From positions 151,419 through 215,418 of the IMG/VR virus record IMGVR_UViG_3300048927_000250: DNA of 64,000 nucleotides; one strand, given 5' to 3'. A model generated the notes under the pieces. That model made no database searches, was not told where the DNA came from, and worked only from the letters and a program-made list of their open reading frames with translations. Each line of letters begins with the position of its first letter. Position 1 is the stretch's first letter. This document shows, piece after piece, positions 10,311-48,271 of the stretch. The translations under genes and the position numbers were made by a program.

Positions 10311-11843
10311 TTATAAATCGAGCAGGAAGCGTGACGCAGACGTTTCTTCACGACGGGTGTCGCGGCTACGGCTGTTATGGTCAATCGCGGCGGTAATCAG
10401 GTCGTCCATGTCGTTCACGATGTTTTGCAGGACACTACTGTCATTTGCTTTCATCGGAGACAACAGGCCATCACAGAAGACCGGTGAGTTAAACGGTTCC
10501 ATTGGACTACCGTCAACGGAGATTTTAATCAGCATGTCAGTAGTAACACGGATGTTCACGGACATGTTGAACGGCAGCTGGTTGTTACGAGACAACAGCA
10601 GACCCAGGTCGGTTTCCAGACGCAGTTCCAGCGCCTGTTCGTAACGGGAGATATCCATGTCACGAATCAGCGGCATTGCGTTGATAACGCTGCAACGAAT
10701 TTGACCGTCGAGAGTTTCGTTGGTCATTTCGATGATGGCAGACGAGATGAAGTTGTTCATGACCAGAGCAGGTAAGGTCTTCGCAATCATCTCAGCGGCC
10801 ATGGTCACGTTGTTCGCGCCACGCCATTCGTTGGTATCACCACGACGAACACGGTTGGTGTCGGTATGACGAGCAGAGCCGAAGCCTACCATCATTGCAC
10901 GCACATCACGCGGCCAGTCAACACAGTCCTGGAATTCAGAGAATGTGATTTCGGCATTGCGTTCGTATTCGGTACGAGACAGGAAGTTACGGAACAGTTC
11001 ATTACGGTGCAACTCGGTGCCACGCAACATCGCTGCTGCACGTTCGCTCGGGTTGAGGTCGTCCTGACGTTCCATTTCTTCGTCCATACGGTTATCGTCA
11101 GAATGACGGGTACCGCGTTCGTTCTGGTCAACGGTTTCCGCCGTTACACCGGTACGAATGATATCGGACAGGTAGTTCGCTGGGTTGTTGTGGATACGAC
11201 GGGCTGTCTTAAAATCACCGGACAGGTTCGTACGGGAATCGTTGTACGCATCAGCGCCACCGAAACGTCCCACGGTTTGTGCTTCGGACTTCTGGAAGAA
11301 GATGTCCTGTGGACGAATCAGAGTATCATGGTTCTGCACGCCAATGAGGTTACGTTCCGTTGCACGACGGCCACGGATGATGTACTCACTGGATTCCATA
11401 CGGCTACCACGACGACGGCCACGACCCGTTTCAATTTCTTCATCACGGATGGTGAACGTGTTGTTGATGTACAGCACGGTATCCGGGTCCATCTCACCGG
11501 ACAACGACAGGTCAGCTTTGTCAGTAAAGCCGGTCAGTACCTGACGGCAGGAAGACCCTGCGTAGTCTTCGGTCAGGACCACGATGATGAACGCCAGACG
11601 TTCTTCATCCCAACCGTTGGCAATCTGGATAATGTCATTACGACCCACATCGGCACGCAGTTCCAGGATTTCACCTACAGCACGGGCGCAGGTGGAGGCA
11701 TCCAGGTTACGCCCATCATTGGTTTCACGCAGGAAGGTTTCACGTACATGGTCAGAACGACGGTTCGGGACGTAGTGACGACCGTACTGGTCTTCTTGAC
11801 CGGAAGTTACGTAGAAGGTTGCTTCAAGTACACGCGGTTCCAT
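10311..11843 (-). CDS. picA: Probable nuclear protein-import factor PicA/Imp1 (phiKZ gp69 position)
   Basis: 510 aa gene directly after the gp68-like subunit; assignment mainly by synteny and size. Confidence 0.55.
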   Translation of the reverse strand: MEPRVLEATFYVTSGQEDQYGRHYVPNRRSDHVRETFLRETNDGRNLDASTCARAVGEILELRADVGRNDIIQIANGWDEERLAFIIVVLTEDYAGSSCRQVLTGFTDKADLSLSGEMDPDTVLYINNTFTIRDEEIETGRGRRRGSRMESSEYIIRGRRATERNLIGVQNHDTLIRPQDIFFQKSEAQTVGRFGGADAYNDSRTNLSGDFKTARRIHNNPANYLSDIIRTGVTAETVDQNERGTRHSDDNRMDEEMERQDDLNPSERAAAMLRGTELHRNELFRNFLSRTEYERNAEITFSEFQDCVDWPRDVRAMMVGFGSARHTDTNRVRRGDTNEWRGANNVTMAAEMIAKTLPALVMNNFISSAIIEMTNETLDGQIRCSVINAMPLIRDMDISRYEQALELRLETDLGLLLSRNNQLPFNMSVNIRVTTDMLIKISVDGSPMEPFNSPVFCDGLLSPMKANDSSVLQNIVNDMDDLITAAIDHNSRSRDTRREETSASRFLLDL

Positions 11844-22926: not shown

Positions 22927-25060
22927 ACGCCTCATCACGGGTGACCATGTCCATCACTAACTTCGACTGTTTCTCGTCAAAGCAATAGAACTCCAGGGAT
23001 TCCAGCACGAGGTAGAACGGGCTCATGGCTTTCGCCACGATTTTACGCACGTCAATCACGGGCAGGACTTCCTTGGGGATTCCCACGGACAGGATAATGG
23101 CTTCAGGAAGAAGCATCTCTCCCACGTACGACTTCCCACGACTGGCTAACCACGCCGTCATCTCATCAGCCGCACTGCGGTTCGACCAGGTCGCTATCCA
23201 CTGTTCGGTCTTACGTTTGGTATCCGGTGTGATACTGAACGACAAGGCGGAATACGGAGGCGGTTCACAGGCACCGTAGTTCGGTGCGAATACCCGTTGC
23301 CACATTTCGTAGTTAATGAAGCGAGAGTTCTCGGTTGAGTACCCTTCCTCTTCGTTCACTCGCGCGGTCTTCAGGTAGTCTGTTTCCCCACTCATCACAC
23401 TTTCCATTACCGTATATTCCCAACGCGCCACCATCCGGAGTATCTTGTGGATGGACACCGGCTCGTCATTCGTGACCGAGTCGATGATGTAGTGCAGTAC
23501 GCCGTCCAGGTCTTTACGGATAACCGGCGGTAAGTTCGAGGCAATCAGTTCTACGCCTTTACGTTCAAAGTCGTATTCCTTGAAGATAACCCCTTCCTGC
23601 ACGGCCATGTTCGCAAAGTAGTGTTTCGCACGCGAGGTCAGGACAAACACCGGGAACAGGTATTCGTTCTTCATCGACAAGCGGAACAACTCTTTCGGGT
23701 CAGTCACCCCGATGTTCGAAACCATGGTTGCCAGGTTATGGGTCGTGGTCTGCGAAATCAGGAAGCCGAAGGTTTCCGCCACGATGATGTTAGCGTGGTT
23801 GATGGTATCGTTACCCGAGTACCAGCGTACCCAATCCTGCACCGTGAAGATGGCGGAGTCAGTATCAGACCCGACGGTCACTTTACGGATACTGGACGGG
23901 AAGTCAGCAATCAGGAACGGGATATTGCGCGTGGTGTGGAACGCATCAATAATCCGGCGGTGGTCATGCAGGCACTGCGTAATCTCGTAGCAGGAGCTAC
24001 CGATTAACCCAAAGTTCGGGTCGTTACGCAATTCCGGGTTGTCCAGTTCTTCACGTCCCAGGATATCCGGATAGATAACCTTCACCTGGTTAATGATGTC
24101 ACCGTCTACTTTCTTCAACCAGTCTTCGTGGTCCGGTACAATGCGCGAGGCACGACAAGACAACCGGTCAATCCAGGTACGCACCAGTTCTTCGTTATAC
24201 AGACGCAGGTGGTAGAAGTCCCCCATGTACATGACGGCGGCACGTTCTTCCGGTTCCATATTGCGCACAAAACGCTCAATGTTGACCAGACCCACTCGGC
24301 CACTCCAGTACGGTTCGATAGACCGCTCCACCATTTGCATGACTTCGTCAGGCGAGGGCATATGGAGACGGTGATGCTCGCACGCGTCACGGACCATGGT
24401 AAAGTCGGTGAGGTCGAGTATCGAGGCAAAGTTATTTATCACCACCTCCGGGGAGTAGTAGTGTCGGTTACCTGCCAGGAACCGTTCGTTATGACTGTTC
24501 GCCACGCCGTTCGCAATACGGCAACTGGAGGTCAGTATCGGGTGAGTCGGACGGTCAACCAGATGCGAGTGTTCTGAACGGTGGTTACCGGAGATGGCGT
24601 TGTTCAGAATCTTTTTGTTGTTCTGGTTGTTCTTGTGCAAAGTCGCTTTGAACGCGTCACCGCGGTTCTTGGCAATCATCTGCTTATGTTTTTCTTCGTT
24701 ACGGTCAGCCAAGTTACCCTTGATGTATTTGGATAACTTCGATTCACGAATCCACGGCGGGAGAACGACCGATAACGTTGGGGCAATGTAATAGCGGTTC
24801 TTGATAACGTAGTCGAGGTACTGGGTGAACGGATACGCTTTCTTCGAGCGGTCCCCCTCCTCGTCTCGTTCCAGGACGCAGACCAGCGGGTCCTTCATCT
24901 GACTTTGCAGTTCCTGAATCACGAACACGCGACATTCGTCCATTTCTACCCCGGTCGACTTCGACAGGTAGATGGCGGTTTGTTCCACGTACGCCCGACG
25001 AATATCCAAATCGCGGCTATATTGCTCAGCCGTGCGGTTAAACGGGTTGGTTGGTTCCAT
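22910..25060 (-). CDS. Family B DNA polymerase subunit (phiKZ gp50-like)
   Basis: Motif C GSDTDS and motif B-like NNKKILNNAISG; start moved to ATG 25060 (MEPTN). Confidence 0.9.
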   Translation of the reverse strand: MEPTNPFNRTAEQYSRDLDIRRAYVEQTAIYLSKSTGVEMDECRVFVIQELQSQMKDPLVCVLERDEEGDRSKKAYPFTQYLDYVIKNRYYIAPTLSVVLPPWIRESKLSKYIKGNLADRNEEKHKQMIAKNRGDAFKATLHKNNQNNKKILNNAISGNHRSEHSHLVDRPTHPILTSSCRIANGVANSHNERFLAGNRHYYSPEVVINNFASILDLTDFTMVRDACEHHRLHMPSPDEVMQMVERSIEPYWSGRVGLVNIERFVRNMEPEERAAVMYMGDFYHLRLYNEELVRTWIDRLSCRASRIVPDHEDWLKKVDGDIINQVKVIYPDILGREELDNPELRNDPNFGLIGSSCYEITQCLHDHRRIIDAFHTTRNIPFLIADFPSSIRKVTVGSDTDSAIFTVQDWVRWYSGNDTINHANIIVAETFGFLISQTTTHNLATMVSNIGVTDPKELFRLSMKNEYLFPVFVLTSRAKHYFANMAVQEGVIFKEYDFERKGVELIASNLPPVIRKDLDGVLHYIIDSVTNDEPVSIHKILRMVARWEYTVMESVMSGETDYLKTARVNEEEGYSTENSRFINYEMWQRVFAPNYGACEPPPYSALSFSITPDTKRKTEQWIATWSNRSAADEMTAWLASRGKSYVGEMLLPEAIILSVGIPKEVLPVIDVRKIVAKAMSPFYLVLESLEFYCFDEKQSKLVMDMVTRDEAFMLDS

Positions 25061-25112
25061 TGTACAGGTCCTGTAGTCCGATACTTTTGTTCTACACCAT
25101 GACAGGAGAAAA

Positions 25113-25148
25113 TAAAAAATAAATGGGGGACCGAAGTCCCCCGCTTTA
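25113..25148 (-). terminator. Intrinsic terminator with C(UUCG)G loop
   Basis: GGGGGAC-TTCG-GTCCCCC plus U-rich tail on the minus strand. Confidence 0.8.
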
Positions 25149-25571
25149 TTACTCGAAGTTGATGGTAAAGTCGCTGATGTCCACTGACGAAATTGCCAGA
25201 CGAAGTTCAGACAACTTCGCATCACTCAAGTTAGGGAAGTAACCCACGGCATTGCGGGTAGATTCGACCGTGATACTGTCGGCACGAATCCACGGAATCC
25301 CCACCACTAACTTCGTAGTCGGGTCACCTGCCGGGGTAACTACCAGGTACTGGTAACTGGCGTAGTCCAATGGGATTTGTCCACGGGGGACGTTCTCATC
25401 AGCAATCACCTGACCATGTACTGCGGCGGCATCGAAGTTGAAGTACTTCGTGGTATCCGCAGACACTTGGTCGGTTACCTTAACACGATTGAAGGGTCCA
25501 CCTGCCAATGTGGAGTAACACTGGAAGGAGATGGTATCCCCAATTTTGAACTTGTCGAGAATCAGGCTCAC
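25149..25571 (-). CDS. Conserved beta-rich hypothetical protein
   Basis: Probable GTG start at 25571 overlapping the upstream TGA. Confidence 0.7.
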   Translation of the reverse strand: MSLILDKFKIGDTISFQCYSTLAGGPFNRVKVTDQVSADTTKYFNFDAAAVHGQVIADENVPRGQIPLDYASYQYLVVTPAGDPTTKLVVGIPWIRADSITVESTRNAVGYFPNLSDAKLSELRLAISSVDISDFTINFE

Positions 25572-25951
25572 TGCAACACCCCTTTGAATCGGTAGACTAT
25601 ACACAGAGAAGGGCCGGTAATCGGTTCAACCTTGTAACTATAGTTCTCGCCAATCGGAAGTTTGTAATGTTCGCTGATACCGTTGACAATGCGTTTCAAC
25701 ACAGACACCCACACGTCGTCGTAGTTACTCCAGGCGTCATGCGGTGAACTGCCCTCCAAAAGCACGCGCATCTGCGTGGTCACCCAACTTACGGCCATTT
25801 GGGCAGCCAACATCGGCGGCATGTCAGGGTCGTCTTTCAGGTATTCCCGGCCGACACCGTCGACCAGGTACGGAAACAGGTTACAATCACAGAGGACCGC
25901 GTTAGGGGTTTCCGTGATGTTGATTTCCGGTACTTTTCTTTTTTTGCTCAT
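25568..25951 (-). CDS. Small array protein 1
   Basis: 127 aa; strand-helices-beta-hairpin layout; 4-nt overlaps with neighbours. Confidence 0.7.
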   Translation of the reverse strand: MSKKRKVPEINITETPNAVLCDCNLFPYLVDGVGREYLKDDPDMPPMLAAQMAVSWVTTQMRVLLEGSSPHDAWSNYDDVWVSVLKRIVNGISEHYKLPIGENYSYKVEPITGPSLCIVYRFKGVLQ

Positions 25952-26322
25952 CTGCGAACGTACCTCACCACGATGGTTTGGGCTTTGAACAGAAACTTCC
26001 AGTCTGTCACCACCAGGACGTTTCGAGCGTCATCGGCTGCCACTTCATCCCACTGCTTCCGGAACATGTCAATGATACGGACTTGCGCGTCGTAAAGGAC
26101 CGTACGATACCACTCTTGTTCGCCCCGGTCGCTACTGCACCAGGTACAAGCTGTTTCCCACTCACCGCCCTGATTAGTCAGGGCTTGACGGAGCGCCCCT
26201 CCTAACCAGAGGTCGTAGTTGATGTGACAGCCCATGGGGGCCATCTCTACGACGTCATCGAGGAGCTCAAAGGCGCGCATACATTCAAATATTTGAACGC
26301 CGCTGCTACTTGGCTCTTTCAT
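25948..26322 (-). CDS. Small array protein 2
   Basis: GAGGT SD before ATG 26322; C-terminus WKFLFKAQTIVVRYV. Confidence 0.7.
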   Translation of the reverse strand: MKEPSSSGVQIFECMRAFELLDDVVEMAPMGCHINYDLWLGGALRQALTNQGGEWETACTWCSSDRGEQEWYRTVLYDAQVRIIDMFRKQWDEVAADDARNVLVVTDWKFLFKAQTIVVRYVRR

Positions 26323-26329
26323 AAATACC

Positions 26330-26758
26330 TCAGCGCTCGACAGCAATACTCACGGCAATCCCTACCCCCAGTAACTCCGCCCCCTGTACTTCATAATCCA
26401 TACGGCGGAAGTTGAAGTTAAAGTGGTCAAGGCTACCCAAGAGACCGGGCTCGATTACTGCACACAAATCACATATGGAATTAGCGCGTTCTTCCGAAAG
26501 GTCTTGCAGGTGGTCCATCAAGAAGATTTTCTCGTCACGGTACACATGACGAAGAACTTCCTCGACGGCATCTTGCAGGTCTTCGAACCAACCGCTGTCC
26601 GGTGCTTTCTCGTACGCCATGACAGCTTCGGTTGCCATCTTGATGGCTTCTGAAACAGTGAACTCATCCAGGTACCGGCGGACGAACTCACGTATCTCAC
26701 TGCGCGACAGATTAGTGTCAAAGGAGAACACTTCAACACGATGTAAAAATGAACTCAT
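26330..26758 (-). CDS. Small array protein 3
   Basis: 142 aa, GGAG SD. Confidence 0.7.
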   Translation of the reverse strand: MSSFLHRVEVFSFDTNLSRSEIREFVRRYLDEFTVSEAIKMATEAVMAYEKAPDSGWFEDLQDAVEEVLRHVYRDEKIFLMDHLQDLSEERANSICDLCAVIEPGLLGSLDHFNFNFRRMDYEVQGAELLGVGIAVSIAVER

Positions 26759-26768
26759 ATACTCTCCG

Positions 26769-27143
26769 TTAAAACGGTTTGTCGCTTTCGTCCCACTCGA
26801 ACGCCTTGACTCGAATACCCGTGCTTGTATAAGAAACGTCTACAATGGTTGCATCGGGATAATGACGTCGGATGACCGCTGTCTTGTACGACTCCCAGAG
26901 AGCCTGGGCGAATCGCTGGACATCGAGGAGTTCAACACTCCCCAAATCATCCAGACGATTACGTACAATTTGAATCTGGTAGGCGATTTCATCCAACCAG
27001 TCTCGATTAGGGTGACGATGAGCATAAAGGAATGAGGACCACGCTACCGTGTGCAAGACGCGGTAGTGTGGGGAACGTAGTAGTCGCTGATGGGTTCTAT
27101 CAACCCGATACGACGATGGTAGGACTATCCGAATGGTTCTCAT
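26769..27143 (-). CDS. Small array protein 4
   Basis: 124 aa; ATGA overlap. Confidence 0.7.
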   Translation of the reverse strand: MRTIRIVLPSSYRVDRTHQRLLRSPHYRVLHTVAWSSFLYAHRHPNRDWLDEIAYQIQIVRNRLDDLGSVELLDVQRFAQALWESYKTAVIRRHYPDATIVDVSYTSTGIRVKAFEWDESDKPF

Positions 27144-27556
27144 CGTGGTTCAAACCTCACGACCAGAATCCCTCGGGCGAAGTCAGGGGCGACCCTGACC
27201 TCCTTGATGTCTTGTACTCGGTCCGCGTAATTGTGGGTTTTGTTCCGCAACCATTTGGCCACCTGGTGTATCTCGCGATACACCTTCCCACGAATCTGCT
27301 CCACTTCGGATTCGGTCAGGTTATGACTGTCAATCCTCAGTTGGTCACAAATGGCTTCTTCCACGTAGTCGGCCAATTCGTAATACAGACTCATGCGCAT
27401 ATGGAGCCGGTCCTCGCTTTTCGCAGTGATGAAAGAAGCGAGAACAGCGGCTTTGCAGAACGTCCGGGAGCCGATAAACGATTTCATCGCGTACTCCCCG
27501 ATATCACGGTTACGTATGGCGATGTCAATGAGTTCTATTTCTTGACGTCTAGACAT
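27140..27556 (-). CDS. Small array protein 5
   Basis: 138 aa; C-terminus GILVVRFEPR. Confidence 0.7.
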   Translation of the reverse strand: MSRRQEIELIDIAIRNRDIGEYAMKSFIGSRTFCKAAVLASFITAKSEDRLHMRMSLYYELADYVEEAICDQLRIDSHNLTESEVEQIRGKVYREIHQVAKWLRNKTHNYADRVQDIKEVRVAPDFARGILVVRFEPR

Positions 27557-27567
27557 ATAACCCCTGC

Positions 27568-27939
27568 TTATTTCACACGTAAGACAATCGTATCCTTACG
27601 CCGGTTCAAGAATTCCCAACGGCTGACCAGGTGGAAACGCACTTTCCCCGTGTGTCGGTAGATAACCCCTTTTGTAAATGCCTTCGCTTCCGAAAGCATC
27701 TCTTCGGCGTCAACGCGACTCACGTCAAACATCATCAGGTCAGTCACGAAATCCATCTCCCGTTCCGTGAGACCGTACTTATCCGAAGACAAGACCGTAT
27801 CCAGGAACAGGGTGATGTGGGTTTCTAAGTTCAACTGCCCTAACAAGTCGGGAAAGCGTTCCTCTATTACACATTCGTATTTGCTGTACAACCGGTCAAC
27901 GGGAATCAGAATCAATTCGTCGCGGCGGTTACGGCTCAT
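27568..27939 (-). CDS. Small array protein 6
   Basis: Start moved to ATG 27939; C-terminus WEFLNRRKDTIVLRVK. Confidence 0.7.
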   Translation of the reverse strand: MSRNRRDELILIPVDRLYSKYECVIEERFPDLLGQLNLETHITLFLDTVLSSDKYGLTEREMDFVTDLMMFDVSRVDAEEMLSEAKAFTKGVIYRHTGKVRFHLVSRWEFLNRRKDTIVLRVK

Positions 27940-28405
27940 AGGCGATACCCTTATTAATACAGTACTGCTGGGCCCGCCAATCTCCGAACATTTCCAGAAT
28001 GAACACCTCACGGGAGTCATTGTAGAGTTCGTAGATTTGCCAGCGGCTGTGCAACGAGAATCGGGATGCATGGTCACGGATGCGGTCTTCAATCCGGTAC
28101 ATGATGTCCGACAACGTTATCGACTCCTGGTCTCGAACCGTCCCATCTCGGGTTACCCCTGGGTACGGGTAGTACCCGTCAAACCACTTCTCTATCGCGG
28201 TGTCAACATCCCAGTTGTCAGCCTGGTATTTGACGTTGCGATGACACTCATTCCAGAGAATGTTCAGGAGGGTATCCCGGGTGTCGTCGTAAGTAAGTTT
28301 GTCGCTTTTGAATCGGCGGTCAAAGGCATCGTTTCGTTCGCGCTCATGTATAATCCAGGCATGGAGTAAATCCTGCCATTGGCTCAGGTCTATCTTAAAG
28401 CGCAT
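27929..28405 (-). CDS. Small array protein 7
   Basis: GAGGAG SD before ATG 28405. Confidence 0.7.
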   Translation of the reverse strand: MRFKIDLSQWQDLLHAWIIHERERNDAFDRRFKSDKLTYDDTRDTLLNILWNECHRNVKYQADNWDVDTAIEKWFDGYYPYPGVTRDGTVRDQESITLSDIMYRIEDRIRDHASRFSLHSRWQIYELYNDSREVFILEMFGDWRAQQYCINKGIAYEP

Positions 28406-28406
28406 T

Positions 28407-28862
28407 TTAGTACTCCTCACTGTCGGCGACGTAGAACCACTCGGCTGTCGGTTCCGGGTCTTCCAGGCAGTATGGGCTGATAATGTTTAGAGGTATTAAC
28501 AGTCGGTCAAATGAACGCCACAGTCGTTCGTAACCATGACGTTCAGCACCTCGGCCAGTAAAGCTGTTGGCAAAGGCCTGGAACTCTTGCCACTGTCGTT
28601 CAGGTAAGTCGTTATCGTCACTTTCATGCGAGTCGATAAACAGCTCGTAGAAGTTGGTTTCCCACGCCATTATAAACTGCTCTTCCATTCGTTTGTCCCA
28701 ACGAATTTCCAATGCGTTACGGCGGTAGAATCCTTGCATAGTTACCCAGGTTTCCAGCAAGGACTGATAGACCCATTGAAGGTCGAGGTTAATTGGAGTT
28801 CGGTCTAACGCATTCTGAAGGAAGCGTGGGACATCGAACCTATGTCCAGTAATCACGTACAT
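28407..28862 (-). CDS. Small array protein 8
   Basis: 151 aa, GGAGG SD. Confidence 0.7.
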   Translation of the reverse strand: MYVITGHRFDVPRFLQNALDRTPINLDLQWVYQSLLETWVTMQGFYRRNALEIRWDKRMEEQFIMAWETNFYELFIDSHESDDNDLPERQWQEFQAFANSFTGRGAERHGYERLWRSFDRLLIPLNIISPYCLEDPEPTAEWFYVADSEEY

Positions 28863-29154
28863 CTACCTCCGTCATGCTCAAGAACCCACAGCTCAACTTC
28901 GGGTCCTTCACTGCGTGGACATACGACGGCAAATGCATGGCGCGTTTACCGTAAATGTTGCGCACTTTCTCGGCCACGAATAACTCCCCGCCGCCGATGG
29001 CTCGATGGTCGAAGCCGTCCACAATCAGGTCGTTGTCCTTAACCAAGATGTACAGCAGGATATCCAGCAGGTTATAATTTTCCCCGTCAATGAGTTCGTA
29101 GCATACCTCTTCTATAAAACTGAGTCGCCCGTGACACTCAACGGTGAATCTCAT
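28840..29154 (-). CDS. Small array protein 9 (first gene of the operon)
   Basis: 104 aa, GAGG SD. Confidence 0.65.
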   Translation of the reverse strand: MRFTVECHGRLSFIEEVCYELIDGENYNLLDILLYILVKDNDLIVDGFDHRAIGGGELFVAEKVRNIYGKRAMHLPSYVHAVKDPKLSCGFLSMTEVDVRDYWT

Positions 29155-29296
29155 GTAACGCCTCTCGGTTCGCCATAATCATCTCCACAACCCTCGCTGA
29201 GCGCTTTAAACTATCCGCCCTATACAAGGTTCCACATAACAGAGAAAACCGCGTAGAATTTAATACAGGCGGTTTCCTGAATTTGTATTCATCTGG

Positions 29297-29304
29297 ATAA
29301 TATA
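29297..29304 (-). promoter_or_regulatory. Early-type promoter variant TATATTAT driving the small-gene array
   Basis: One mismatch to consensus, intergenic, about 140 nt upstream of the first array gene. Confidence 0.5.
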
Positions 29305-29327
29305 TCCTTTAAACTCTGTTAGTTAGG

Positions 29328-29605
29328 AAAGAAAATAAAAGAAGATATTCTGGTTACCTCACCGCTCGCGCTCGTAAGCCGATTGTGTGGGTAACCAGGT
29401 ATCTTGTCGTGCTTGTGGTCCCGTCCAGAGTCAGTCGCTGCAATAGCGCTTCGTCATCGCGGTTAACGCGAGTTCCCCGCTGGGAACTTAATGGCCGCAA
29501 TTAAGCAGCTTGGGTTTTTTGGGGTACCTCTGCACGCAGGTGTTGACCAGACACCCCGCAGCTATTCCATCCAGAGAACAACTACGTTAGCTTGCATATT
29601 TGTAC
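29328..29605 (-). ncRNA. Candidate structured non-coding RNA (or structured phuZ 3' extension)
   Basis: No long ORF; at least five hairpins; ends in a long stem plus U-tract; TATG motifs at the 5' end. Confidence 0.4.
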
Positions 29606-29635
29606 ATATAATAGACTAAACCGCTAACGGTTCTC

Positions 29636-30604
29636 TTACGAAGAGAATTTAAAGCCGTCGTCGTTCAGACCAGCGGTATCCAGCACGTCAACGCTCTCAC
29701 GTTGTTTACGGGCACGGGCCAGCGCTTCGAAGTTGTCCACGGTCTTTTGCAGGCCTGCAATCACACCCGCCAGGTCCTGGGTATAGATGATGAAGTGCAG
29801 GTCGTTCTTTTCAGCTACGCGGCGATACCCTTCACAACCGTATTCAGACGGCAGAGATGGGTTGGCACCGTCCACTGAACCGTGCAGGCTGGCAACCGCC
29901 AGTGGGTATGGCAGCGACTTCGCATGGCTGTAGTCTGGGGTGATGTCCAGTAGCGCAACGCCTGGGCCGTTTTTCACGTTGAAGAAACGGTGTACGTCAG
30001 AGCTGTCGAGACGGTCGTGTTCGCCAGAGTACAGGTCAAGGATAGACAGCAAGCCCAGAACCATCTGTGCATCAACGTCGTTGTCCTGTGCCACAGAACC
30101 GTTATCTTCGTAGAAGACGACCGCAGTGGATTCGTTCTTCTTCGCGATACCGTTCAGGGTCTGCCAGGTATCCATGGTGTTTTTGGTGGTCTGGGAGTTT
30201 TCCGCAGAACCTACCACAAAGAACACGGTTGGTTTTTTCTGGCGCAGCAGTTCTTCAGCCAGTTTCGGTCCAATAACAGAACCGGAACCGCCACCGCCTG
30301 AGAACACCAGAATGTTCAGGTCACCGGCAGGGTGGCTGACCAGCACGTCTGGGATGGCGCGGGCGATGGGGTGATAGTTGGTACTGCGCTCTTTGCCAGA
30401 ACCGTCGGTTGCACCCGGGATGATATAACAGTCTTCATCACGGAAGTTGGAACCGCCGATGGCGCTAAAGTTTGAACGAGAGGTATCGACGAAGTGGGCT
30501 TTCACTTCGGCCAGACCCGCGAGGTTTTTCTTCATCAGCAGGCTGACAATGTTGATACCAGTGCCGCCACAGCCATAGATGGAAACGGTGTTACGTGAGC
30601 TCAT
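29636..30604 (-). CDS. phuZ: Tubulin-like spindle protein PhuZ
   Basis: GCGGTGIN and SGGGGSGS tubulin/FtsZ signature motifs; 322 aa. Confidence 0.95.
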   Translation of the reverse strand: MSSRNTVSIYGCGGTGINIVSLLMKKNLAGLAEVKAHFVDTSRSNFSAIGGSNFRDEDCYIIPGATDGSGKERSTNYHPIARAIPDVLVSHPAGDLNILVFSGGGGSGSVIGPKLAEELLRQKKPTVFFVVGSAENSQTTKNTMDTWQTLNGIAKKNESTAVVFYEDNGSVAQDNDVDAQMVLGLLSILDLYSGEHDRLDSSDVHRFFNVKNGPGVALLDITPDYSHAKSLPYPLAVASLHGSVDGANPSLPSEYGCEGYRRVAEKNDLHFIIYTQDLAGVIAGLQKTVDNFEALARARKQRESVDVLDTAGLNDDGFKFSS

Positions 30605-30706
30605 TGTTTTGGGTCCTTAACACAAAGGTTATTCAAAAAGGTTACCAACGTTATACTTCTACACAGTTACTGTGACATACGTACATTTTGAAACGGAGCG
30701 AGCCCA

Positions 30707-47869: not shown

Positions 47870-48271
47870 TTATGACTTACGATTCTGGTGAGCAGCGATA
47901 CCGTTGACAATGCGTTTCAACGCGTCGACCGTGTCGTTCCACTTGCGGTACAATTCGCTGGCGTGACCGAATTCAGGGAACGCATTGATTTCGATTTCCA
48001 TCGCGCGCATCACACCTTTGAAGTCATGGTGGTCGAACATAGATGGCCAGACAGCCCCGATGTGGGATTTGACGGTCTGGTACTGCATCCCAGCTTTGGA
48101 AGCTTTCATTTCCCCAACGGTTGGGAGACGCACTTTATCCAAATAGTCAGTAAGCTCGGACAAAGGTGCTTCGGTTTGCTTATTCAAAAGCTTGATAAGT
48201 TTTTCTTTATGCTCATCATCGAGTTCTTCGATTAGACCCACGATGATATTGTATATTTTTTCTTGTTTCAT
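47870..48271 (-). CDS. Hypothetical protein (paralogue of 48307-48702)
   Basis: 133 aa; aligns by eye with the upstream gene. Confidence 0.7.
   Translation of the reverse strand: MKQEKIYNIIVGLIEELDDEHKEKLIKLLNKQTEAPLSELTDYLDKVRLPTVGEMKASKAGMQYQTVKSHIGAVWPSMFDHHDFKGVMRAMEIEINAFPEFGHASELYRKWNDTVDALKRIVNGIAAHQNRKS

What the first reader, a model, noticed from the sequence alone, without database searches (positions are those of the whole stretch)
25568..29154. Operon of nine small, highly diverged same-architecture proteins between PhuZ and the DNA polymerase
Seen: nine 104-158 aa tightly packed genes (several overlapping) follow one early-type promoter. Most show an N-terminal strand (VLCDC, VQIFEC, VEVFSFD, IRIVLP, IELIDI, LILIPV, FKIDL), an acidic helical middle and a C-terminal beta-hairpin. 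Members 2 and 6 are clearly alike (WKFLFKAQTIVVRYV vs WEFLNRRKDTIVLRVK), and members 4 and 5 end in GI.V. Recalled: phiKZ has small ORFs between phuZ and its polymerase that include the cargo-specific import factors Imp4/Imp5. Inference: a diversified adaptor repertoire, for example nuclear-import cargo adaptors or host-protein binders built on one scaffold.
Basis: partly seen in the sequence, partly recalled or inferred. Interest (0 to 1): 0.68.

Follow-up and report, generated by a model that had tools for sequence, protein, structure and literature searches.

The report
Old paralogue cassette beside phage tubulin
The nine small genes are real and belong to an ancient, order-conserved early operon of nucleus-forming jumbo phages; most of its proteins look like very old copies of one small fold, and their function, possibly helping specific proteins into the phage nucleus, is still untested.

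Summary
The window is from a relative of Erwinia phage PhiEaH1 (99% identity), a nucleus-forming jumbo phage. The nine minus-strand ORFs (25568-29154) are real genes: all are kept as ORFs in seven diverged metagenomic relatives, with dN/dS 0.06-0.29. Together with a tenth gene (SH3DP, PF20287) they form one tightly packed unit. It runs from a phiKZ-type early promoter (TATATTAT-N5-TGA, 29304) to a terminator (25142-25125).

None of the nine hits Pfam, PHROGs, NCBIfam or PDB, and pairwise BLAST among them finds nothing. Their best BFVD matches are almost all small jumbo-phage proteins, including other members of this operon. With deeper profiles, 6 and 2 align over their full length (HHalign 85%, P 6e-6). 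m0-m3 and m5-m3 also exceed every reversed-profile control.

The set is not a fluid repertoire. It is a strictly collinear 10-11-gene cassette with one-to-one orthologues across several enterobacterial jumbo-phage genera. Members 1, 8 and 9 remain unlinked. No similarity to phiKZ Imp2 or Imp4 was found, and the import-adaptor role is untested.

The parts
29289..29304 (-). Early-type promoter-like site, TATATTAT-CCAGA-TGA
   Evidence: One of 12 TATATTAY-N5-TGA sites in the 215-kb genome. All are on the minus strand, 11 are intergenic, and each lies 41-165 nt before an ORF (one 887 nt). Chance expectation is 0.125. The site is invariant in five related genomes. It matches the published phiKZ/201phi2-1 early promoter consensus (PMC7058600).
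29244..29277 (-). Hairpin in the 5' leader (GGAAACCGC...GCGGTTTTC)
   Evidence: Read from the sequence. It is conserved in relatives, with changes on both arms in L012 (alignment A4). Its role is unknown.
29138..29176 (-). 12-codon remnant of the cassette's first gene (m0, 138 aa in relatives), left by a clean in-frame deletion
   Evidence: Alignment A4: the start ATGGCGAAC and the last codons are kept and about 380 nt are missing. tblastn of m0 finds no copy elsewhere in the genome.
   Evidence: ORF. Conserved in relatives with dN/dS 0.06-0.11. Orthologues are X1_2, X2_2, Moabite gp028 and SPLA10 gene 192. No link to the other members was found.
28407..28862 (-). m8, 151 aa
   Evidence: ORF, conserved. 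Orthologues are X1_3 and X2_3; the positional genes of FBKp24 and KpLz score E 0.007-0.015. No link to the other members was found.
27929..28405 (-). m7, 158 aa (the ORF can be read from GTG at 28420 as 163 aa)
   Evidence: Relatives and database clusters start at MRFK. Orthologues occur in six genera, with invariant D6, W51-N52, D92 and G141-D142-x-R144. Only 16 clusters exist among 1.84 billion proteins, all 158-186 aa. It is the BFVD match of the m6 model at E 9.6e-3, TM 0.51.
27568..27939 (-). m6, 123 aa
   Evidence: AF2 model: pLDDT 73, pTM 0.63, b1(8-13), four helices, b2(108-114), b3(117-122). An invariant VDRLYSKYEC follows strand 1. HHalign to the m2 family gives prob 85%, P 5.7e-6 over 117 columns.
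27140..27556 (-). m5, 138 aa
   Evidence: Conserved. Orthologues are Moabite gp032, KpLz, FBKp24, SPLA10, PCH45 and X1/X2. HHalign to m3 gives P 6e-4. A 138-aa PhiEaH1 entry matches both models in BFVD.
26769..27143 (-). m4, 124 aa; not annotated in the PhiEaH1 record
   Evidence: The annotation has a gap here. The ORF is conserved at 46-71% identity with dN/dS 0.18. Orthologues are PCH45, SPLA10 and X1/X2. The C-terminal tail F-[ED]-x-D-x-x-D-x-P-F is conserved. There are weak reciprocal HMM hits with m3 (E 0.006-0.008).
26330..26758 (-). m3, 142 aa
   Evidence: Conserved. Orthologues occur in five other lineages. HHalign to m0 gives P 3.5e-4 and to m5 P 6e-4.
25948..26322 (-). m2, 124 aa from the ATG (annotated in PhiEaH1 from TTG at 26346 as 132 aa)
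   Evidence: Relatives start at MKEPS. AF2 model: pLDDT 73, pTM 0.71. BFVD returns m6 at rank 4 and a 138-aa PhiEaH1 protein at rank 5.
25568..25951 (-). m1, 127 aa
   Evidence: Conserved, with dN/dS 0.07-0.21. Orthologues are found only in X1/X2. No link to the other members. It sits in the slot that Imp4 (gp48, also 127 aa) holds in phiKZ, directly before SH3DP.
25149..25571 (-). Tenth gene of the unit: SH3DP protein, 140 aa from GTG
   Evidence: PF20287 at E 5.9e-29 and phrog_3235 at E 1e-33. It is conserved in all compared jumbo phages, including phiKZ gp49. It served as the unrelated-fold control in the profile comparisons.
25125..25142 (-). Intrinsic-terminator-like hairpin plus T-run that ends the unit, before the DNA polymerase gene
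   Evidence: GGGGGACTTCGGTCCCCC followed by ATTTATTTTT.

Best explanation
The nine ORFs plus the SH3DP gene are the local copy of an ancient, strictly collinear early-gene cassette. Relatives carry 10 small genes plus SH3DP; the first small gene, m0, is deleted here. The cassette lies between the tubulin PhuZ and the DNA polymerase in nucleus-forming jumbo phages of Enterobacterales.

It is transcribed as one unit from a phiKZ-type early promoter. The genes are translationally coupled.

At least six or seven of the ten small proteins (m0, m2, m3, m5, m6, m7 and, weakly, m4) are very old paralogues of one small alpha/beta scaffold. The scaffold is an N-terminal strand, a 3-4-helix bundle, and a C-terminal beta-hairpin that should pair with the first strand. 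After the duplications each paralogue was kept as a single-copy orthologue. Each is under purifying selection while drifting about 3-4 times faster than PhuZ.

Inferred, not shown: each protein is a small protein-binding module made in the first minutes of infection, and each recognises its own partner through its variable helical face. The most likely role is as accessory or adaptor factors of the phage nucleus, for example cargo-specific import through Imp1. This role was shown genetically for Imp2 and Imp4, which occupy the same genomic slot in phiKZ.
For: Real genes and one unit:
- ORFs; conservation and dN/dS 0.06-0.29.
- Gaps from -23 to +11 nt with SD motifs.
- Promoter motif at 12 sites against 0.125 expected; terminator.

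Ancient collinear cassette:
- Synteny from PhuZ through the small genes, SH3DP and the DNA polymerase to ChmA holds in Moabite, SPLA10, FBKp24, PCH45, KpLz-2_45, Eowyn, Goslar, PhiPA3 and phiKZ.
- Seven metagenomic relatives have the same gene count and order.
- Iterative HMMs recover only positional orthologues, in order.
- Each family has one copy in the genome.

Shared scaffold:
- AF2 models of m6 and m2 have the same element order.
- The BFVD neighbours of both models are almost all small jumbo-phage proteins.
- The non-self PhiEaH1 neighbours have the lengths of m7, m5, m3 (query m6) and of m6, m5 (query m2). gp058, the other 138-aa protein checked, is excluded by its accession.
- The four Eowyn neighbours have the lengths of four genes of Eowyn's own cassette.
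- HHalign gives m6-m2 P 5.7e-6, m0-m3 P 3.5e-4 and m5-m3 P 6e-4. All three alignments are collinear and cover most or all of the length. The best of 110 reversed-profile controls is P 0.018, and nothing matches SH3DP.

Functional lead:
- Imp2 (gp47) and Imp4 (gp48) lie directly before gp49/SH3DP and gp50/DNA polymerase in phiKZ.
- The same promoter type precedes the operon that holds the Imp1 homologue.
Against: - m1, m8 and m9 have no sequence or structural link to the others. m4 has only weak HMM cross-hits.
- TM-scores between members are borderline (0.43-0.51).
- Both models rest on shallow alignments of 5-6 sequences, with mean pLDDT 73. The C-terminal strands are the least confident part (54-67), and one expected strand of m2 is modelled as a helix.
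- BFVD entries were assigned to operon genes by length and accession pattern, not by a direct look-up.
- The m6-m2 profile hit needs members added on synteny plus sub-threshold scores. With strict membership it drops to P 0.014.
- A crude propensity test of 'strands at both ends' gave only modest enrichment over other small ORFs.
- Function: no similarity to Imp2 or Imp4 (best P 0.05-0.15). m7 is not detectable in phiKZ, PhiPA3 or Goslar. There are no localisation, interaction or expression data.
Confidence: 0.5

Rival explanations
1. Direct orthologues of the phiKZ cargo adaptors: m1 and m2 (and their paralogues) are Imp4 and Imp2 diverged beyond recognition. They dock specific cargo on Imp1 at the nuclear shell.
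For: They hold the same slot immediately upstream of SH3DP and the DNA polymerase. m1 and Imp4 are both 127 aa. By eye and by the crude score, Imp4 has the same layout of terminal strands and an acidic helical middle. Imp2, Imp4 and Imp5 are described as cargo-specific adaptors with no homologues outside Pseudomonas phages, so enterobacterial phages need substitutes.
Against: No profile similarity between the Imp2 or Imp4 families and any cassette family. Imp4 has only two clusters in the word search, so its profile is shallow. The phiKZ interval is rearranged, with gp42 inside it. No fold of Imp2 or Imp4 could be made here.
Confidence: 0.2
2. Early host-takeover or anti-defence proteins: small binders of host proteins, made from the injected genome before the nucleus matures.
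For: Early-type promoter. Small and mostly acidic (pI 4.5-6.3 for seven of nine). No homologues outside phages. They evolve 3-4 times faster than PhuZ. One member, m0, is dispensable in this lineage.
Against: Strict one-to-one orthology and fixed order hold across phages of Erwinia, Serratia, Klebsiella and Salmonella. dN/dS stays well below 1. Host-specific weapons usually turn over, and this set does not.
Confidence: 0.15
3. Subunits of one hetero-oligomeric assembly built from paralogous subunits, possibly tied to replication through SH3DP and the DNA polymerase.
For: The paralogues are old, single-copy, collinear and translationally coupled. They are co-transcribed with SH3DP, a domain family named for its association with phage DNA polymerases.
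Against: m0 is lost here without loss of the rest. Moabite lacks a detectable m6 and KpLz lacks m9. A terminator separates the unit from the polymerase gene. No interaction was tested.
Confidence: 0.1
4. Unrelated orphan genes whose likeness is only the generic look of small alpha+beta proteins.
For: No pairwise similarity. Shallow profiles find nothing. TM-scores are about 0.45-0.5. The propensity test is weak. PDB searches return only generic helical matches.
Against: Three family pairs beat all 110 reversed controls with collinear alignments over most or all of the length. All same-genome BFVD neighbours of both models have lengths of operon members, out of about 240 proteins. The top neighbours are jumbo-phage proteins, not random viral helical proteins.
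Confidence: 0.05

Closest known systems
phiKZ Imp2 (gp47) and Imp4 (gp48), cargo-specific nuclear import adaptors (bioRxiv 10.1101/2024.03.27.586873; 10.64898/2026.09.21.753271)
   Same: Small proteins (178 and 127 aa) encoded directly upstream of the SH3DP gene and the DNA polymerase in a nucleus-forming jumbo phage. No known domains. Narrow sequence distribution. By eye, Imp4 has the N-terminal strand, acidic middle and C-terminal hairpin pattern.
   Different: No detectable sequence-profile similarity. Their fold could not be compared here. Their function is shown genetically, while nothing is known for the cassette members. The phiKZ interval is interrupted by gp42.
Positional orthologues in other enterobacterial jumbo phages: Moabite gp027-036, SPLA10 genes 190-199, PCH45, FBKp24 gp320-327, KpLz-2_45 gp303-311, Eowyn gp074-084
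   Same: Same cassette, same order, and orthology recoverable by HMM for eight of ten positions (m6 and m8 only with sub-threshold positional support beyond X1/X2; m1 only in X1/X2). All are annotated as hypothetical proteins. The 153-aa Eowyn entry (the length of gp076) is the second-best non-self structural match of m6, with TM 0.73.
   Different: Identity is 15-30% or undetectable. Gene content varies by one or two genes.
SH3DP, PF20287 / phrog_3235 (phiKZ gp49)
   Same: It is the tenth gene of the same transcription unit and is conserved in every compared genome.
   Different: A different, all-beta fold family. It has no profile similarity to the nine.

Membership tests
phiKZ Imp4 (gp48) family | Sequence or profile similarity to gp48 and its Pseudomonas-phage homologues | tested here: not met
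   HHalign of gp48+P0038(+PhiPA3 gp045) against all ten cassette profiles: best P 0.054-0.15.
phiKZ Imp4 (gp48) family | Position immediately upstream of the SH3DP gene and the DNA polymerase | tested here: met
   m1 (25568-25951) overlaps the SH3DP start by 4 nt. gp48 precedes gp49/SH3DP in phiKZ.
phiKZ Imp4 (gp48) family | Required for import of a specific cargo (TopA) into the phage nucleus | not testable with these tools
   Needs genetics and microscopy.
phiKZ Imp2 (gp47) family | Sequence or profile similarity to gp47 / PhiPA3 gp044 | tested here: not met
   Best P 0.14.
phiKZ Imp2 (gp47) family | Dependence on and contact with Imp1 | tested here: inconclusive
   Co-fold of the Imp1 homologue (window 10311-11843) with m2 gave no verdict: 0.59 against a control at 0.41. 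This is not evidence either way.
   Met for m6 and m2 in AF2 models at pLDDT 73.
   Met for m6-m2, m0-m3 and m5-m3. Foldseek gives m6->m7, m5, m3 and m2->m6, m5 at E 0.01-0.26 and TM 0.43-0.51. Not met for m1, m8 and m9; weak for m4.
phiKZ-type early transcription unit | Promoter matching TATATTAC(-N-GTG) upstream of the first gene, on the coding strand | tested here: met
   TATATTAT-CCAGA-TGA at 29304; 12 sites in the genome against 0.125 expected; published consensus. Early timing itself was not measured.
SH3DP (PF20287), tenth gene only | Pfam score above the gathering threshold | tested here: met
   100.6 bits against a cut-off of 25.

The most novel reading that the evidence does not exclude
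The cassette encodes a previously unrecognised superfamily of phage-nucleus cargo adaptors built on one beta-alpha-bundle-beta-hairpin scaffold. phiKZ Imp2 and Imp4 would be its divergent Pseudomonas-phage members. Each paralogue would license a different cargo at Imp1, so the ten-gene set would be the 'address book' of the phage nucleus in enterobacterial jumbo phages.
Probability: 0.15. Interest if true: 0.8.

Novelty: new variant of a known kind. Interest (0 to 1): 0.5.

Why it matters
[quoted passage not shown] This work gives a defined shortlist of ten conserved early proteins. They sit in the equivalent genomic slot in phages of Erwinia, Serratia, Klebsiella and Salmonella. Most appear to share one scaffold that has no solved relative.

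That turns the question of who provides cargo specificity elsewhere into a testable one. It also shows that these 'orphan' genes are not disposable filler: they form an old, purifying-selected module.

If they prove to be ordinary early accessory proteins, the result is still useful for annotation. It adds one unannotated gene, corrects three start codons, and defines a promoter motif and a gene-family map.

Tried and rejected
- Pfam, PHROGs and NCBIfam scans of all members returned nothing.
- Pairwise BLAST and shallow HHalign among the nine returned nothing.
- A PhuZ single-sequence scan of IMG/VR returned nothing.
- The PDB profile search with the m7 family returned nothing. The Atlas feature search for m7 gave no usable hit.
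- The home-made Chou-Fasman predictor reached Q3 of only 0.55-0.65 against the two models. The terminal-strand test was modest (N-terminal p 0.009, C-terminal p 0.003), and the combined call was not significant. It is not used as evidence.
- Merging families into super-profiles degraded the signal.
- The word search for Imp4 homologues found only two clusters, too few for a deep profile.
- Complex prediction on the Imp1 homologue plus m2 gave no verdict and is not evidence for or against binding.
- Four RNA-library runs hold a 97%-identical relative as contigs of 23-175 kb, that is, whole-genome-scale assemblies. They show presence, not transcription, ends or strand.
- The weak m1-like HMM hit at window 47870-48271 is a 42-residue helical stretch only.

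Full report
**Identity of the window.** The region is 99% identical to Erwinia phage PhiEaH1 (Iapetusvirus, 218 kb) and to vB_Ea277G. The window is the last 64 kb of a 215,418-bp genome. Its neighbours are the tubulin PhuZ (29636-30604, minus), the DNA polymerase, the nuclear-shell protein ChmA and RNA polymerase subunits. This is therefore a nucleus-forming (phiKZ-like) jumbo phage.

**The observation.** All nine ORFs lie on the minus strand at the stated coordinates. One search with the best-conserved member found five metagenomic relatives at 61-75% identity. Their contigs carry the whole region in the same order. Two more distant genomes, X1 and X2, were reached through the Imp1 homologue (45% identity) and have the same layout.
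- Every one of the nine is kept as an ORF of nearly the same length. Amino-acid identity is 44-77% and dN/dS is 0.06-0.29, while dN is three to four times that of PhuZ.
- The relatives fix three start codons: member 7 is 158 aa, member 2 is 124 aa and SH3DP is 140 aa.
- Member 4 (26769-27143) is missing from the PhiEaH1 annotation but is a real gene.

**Transcription unit.**
- Genes overlap or are at most 11 nt apart, and each has an SD-like motif.
- TATATTAT-CCAGA-TGA lies 150 nt upstream of the first gene. The pattern TATATTAY-N5-TGA occurs 12 times in the genome. All sites are on the minus strand and 11 are intergenic. Each precedes an ORF, and 0.125 sites are expected by chance.
- The motif equals the published early-promoter consensus of phiKZ and 201phi2-1 (PMC7058600). 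It also precedes the operon that holds the Imp1 homologue.
- The unit does not end after the ninth gene. A tenth gene, SH3DP (PF20287, E 6e-29), overlaps member 1 by 4 nt. A G+C-rich hairpin with a T-run follows it at 25142-25125.
- Relatives have an eleventh gene, m0 (138 aa), at the 5' end. Here it is removed by a clean in-frame deletion that leaves a 12-codon remnant overlapping the start of member 9.

**Known families.** Pfam, PHROGs, NCBIfam, the PDB (by sequence and by fold) and the ESM Atlas gave nothing for any of the nine. An exhaustive profile search with member 7 found only 16 clusters among 1.84 billion proteins, all 158-186 aa.

**One scaffold: sequence evidence.** Pairwise BLAST and profiles of 5-6 sequences found no similarity among the nine. 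I then collected the interval from nine GenBank jumbo phages and the seven metagenomic genomes, and built families by iterative HMM search.
- Every family recruited only genes in the corresponding position of other genomes. This gives a strictly collinear map, m0-m9-m8-m7-m6-m5-m4-m3-m2-m1-SH3DP. It spans the PhiEaH1 clade, X1/X2, Moabite, SPLA10/PCH45, FBKp24/KpLz-2_45 and part of Eowyn.
- Each family is single-copy in this genome.
- With these deeper profiles HHalign gives m6-m2 at probability 85%, P 5.7e-6 over 117 columns. The alignment runs from residue 1 to the end.
- m0-m3 (P 3.5e-4) and m5-m3 (P 6e-4) are also collinear; m0-m3 covers nearly the full length and m5-m3 the first two-thirds.
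- The best of 110 forward-versus-reversed controls is P 0.018. SH3DP matches nothing.
- The m6-m2 signal grows steadily as members are added on either side. With strict membership it is only P 0.014.

**One scaffold: structural evidence.** Only two fold jobs were available.
- Member 6 (pLDDT 73, pTM 0.63) is b1(8-13), four helices, b2(108-114), b3(117-122).
- Member 2 (pLDDT 73, pTM 0.71) is b1(9-13), three helices, then C-terminal strands.
- Against BFVD, each model finds its own PhiEaH1 entry first (TM 0.83-0.85). After that the matches are almost exclusively small proteins of jumbo phages: Eowyn, RSL2, Desertfox, Ea35-70, RisingSun, Noxifer, PhiPA3 and others.
- The other PhiEaH1 entries in the lists are 163, 138 and 142 aa for query m6, and 123 and 138 aa for query m2. 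These are the lengths of m7, m5, m3 and m6.
- One alternative 138-aa protein, gp058, has another accession. The accession pattern also fits consecutive genes gp027-gp031. This assignment is inferred, not looked up.
- The four Eowyn matches have the lengths of four genes of Eowyn's own cassette. The 153-aa entry (TM 0.73) matches the length of gp076, the gene next to the m7 orthologue, which is the m6 position.
- TM-scores between members are only 0.43-0.51. Members 1, 8 and 9 never appear.

**What it is.** It probably holds for m0, 3, 5 and 7, weakly for 4, and is unshown for 1, 8 and 9. The set is not a fluid, diversifying repertoire. It consists of old tandem duplicates that were already distinct in the common ancestor of these enterobacterial jumbo phages, whose PhuZ proteins are now about 40% identical. 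They have been kept one-to-one and in order ever since, with occasional loss: m0 here, m6 in Moabite, m9 in KpLz.

**Function.** Nothing here measures function.
- The lead is positional. In phiKZ the two genes directly before gp49/SH3DP and gp50/DNA polymerase are Imp2 (gp47) and Imp4 (gp48), the cargo-specific import adaptors.
- In a transposon screen, imp2 and imp4 lack disruptive insertions.
- By eye Imp4 shows the same layout.
- Profile comparison of the Imp2 and Imp4 families with all ten cassette families is negative (best P 0.05-0.15). The m7 family is not detectable in phiKZ, PhiPA3 or Goslar.
- The one co-fold allowed, the Imp1 homologue with member 2, gave no verdict.
- My rough odds for the function: nucleus-associated adaptor or accessory factors about 0.35-0.4, including about 0.2 for direct orthology to Imp2 and Imp4; host-directed early binders 0.15; hetero-oligomer 0.1. 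The remainder is an unknown role.

**Novelty and score.** The genes are annotated 'hypothetical' (one is not annotated at all) and sit in no family database, and no solved structure matches the two folded members (m2, m6). The paralogy, the collinear ten-gene map and the promoter motif appear to be undescribed. Two literature searches found no treatment of them. Arrays of small unknown genes are ordinary in jumbo phages, and no function was shown. Interest is 0.5.

**Limits.** Two fold jobs, shallow alignments and a single complex job.

Noticed in passing
window 29328-29600 (minus strand): The PhuZ-to-cassette spacer is more conserved than the genes around it. It folds into a roughly 270-nt structure that ends in a 17-bp stem plus a T-run. 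Of its 71 pairs, 19 have changes on both sides, against 6.0 +/- 1.9 in shuffles and 1-6 when the partners are slid. There is no Rfam match. This is a candidate new ncRNA or structured 3' UTR of phuZ. A covariance model finds only a weak 5'-domain match in one more distant genome (L023, E 0.1).
   Followed up: partly
window 29138-29176 (minus strand): The first cassette gene, m0 (138 aa in five relatives and in X1/X2; orthologues in Moabite, KpLz and FBKp24), is removed by a clean in-frame deletion. Its start codon and last codons remain, so the remnant still overlaps the ATG of the next gene.
   Followed up: yes
window 26769-27143 (minus strand): Member 4 is not annotated in the PhiEaH1 RefSeq record. 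It is nevertheless conserved, with dN/dS 0.18, and has a strongly conserved C-terminal tail F-[ED]-x-D-x-x-D-x-P-F.
   Followed up: yes
whole genome; window sites 7876, 13470, 29304, 36617, 48776, 52061 (minus strand): Twelve TATATTAY-N5-TGA sites, all on the minus strand, are a likely map of early promoters. One drives the operon that holds the nvRNAP gp68-like gene and the Imp1 homologue.
   Followed up: partly
window 29244-29277 (minus strand): A conserved hairpin followed by TTTTC sits in the 5' leader, between the promoter and the first gene. It could be an attenuator or an RNA-stability element.
   Followed up: no
window 25568-25951 (member 1): The N-terminus MSKKRKVPE is a conserved basic tail that looks like a classical eukaryotic NLS. 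This is probably coincidence, since phage-nucleus import is reported not to use linear signals.
   Followed up: no
window 47870-48271 (minus strand): A 133-aa early-operon protein shares a short helical motif (ALKRIVNGI) with member 1, with HMM E 0.0065 over 42 residues only.
   Followed up: partly
window 24900-30666: A 97%-identical strain is assembled as contigs of 23-175 kb in four 'metatranscriptomic' runs of one study. The window's DNA itself is fully held by a root-metagenome run.
   Followed up: partly
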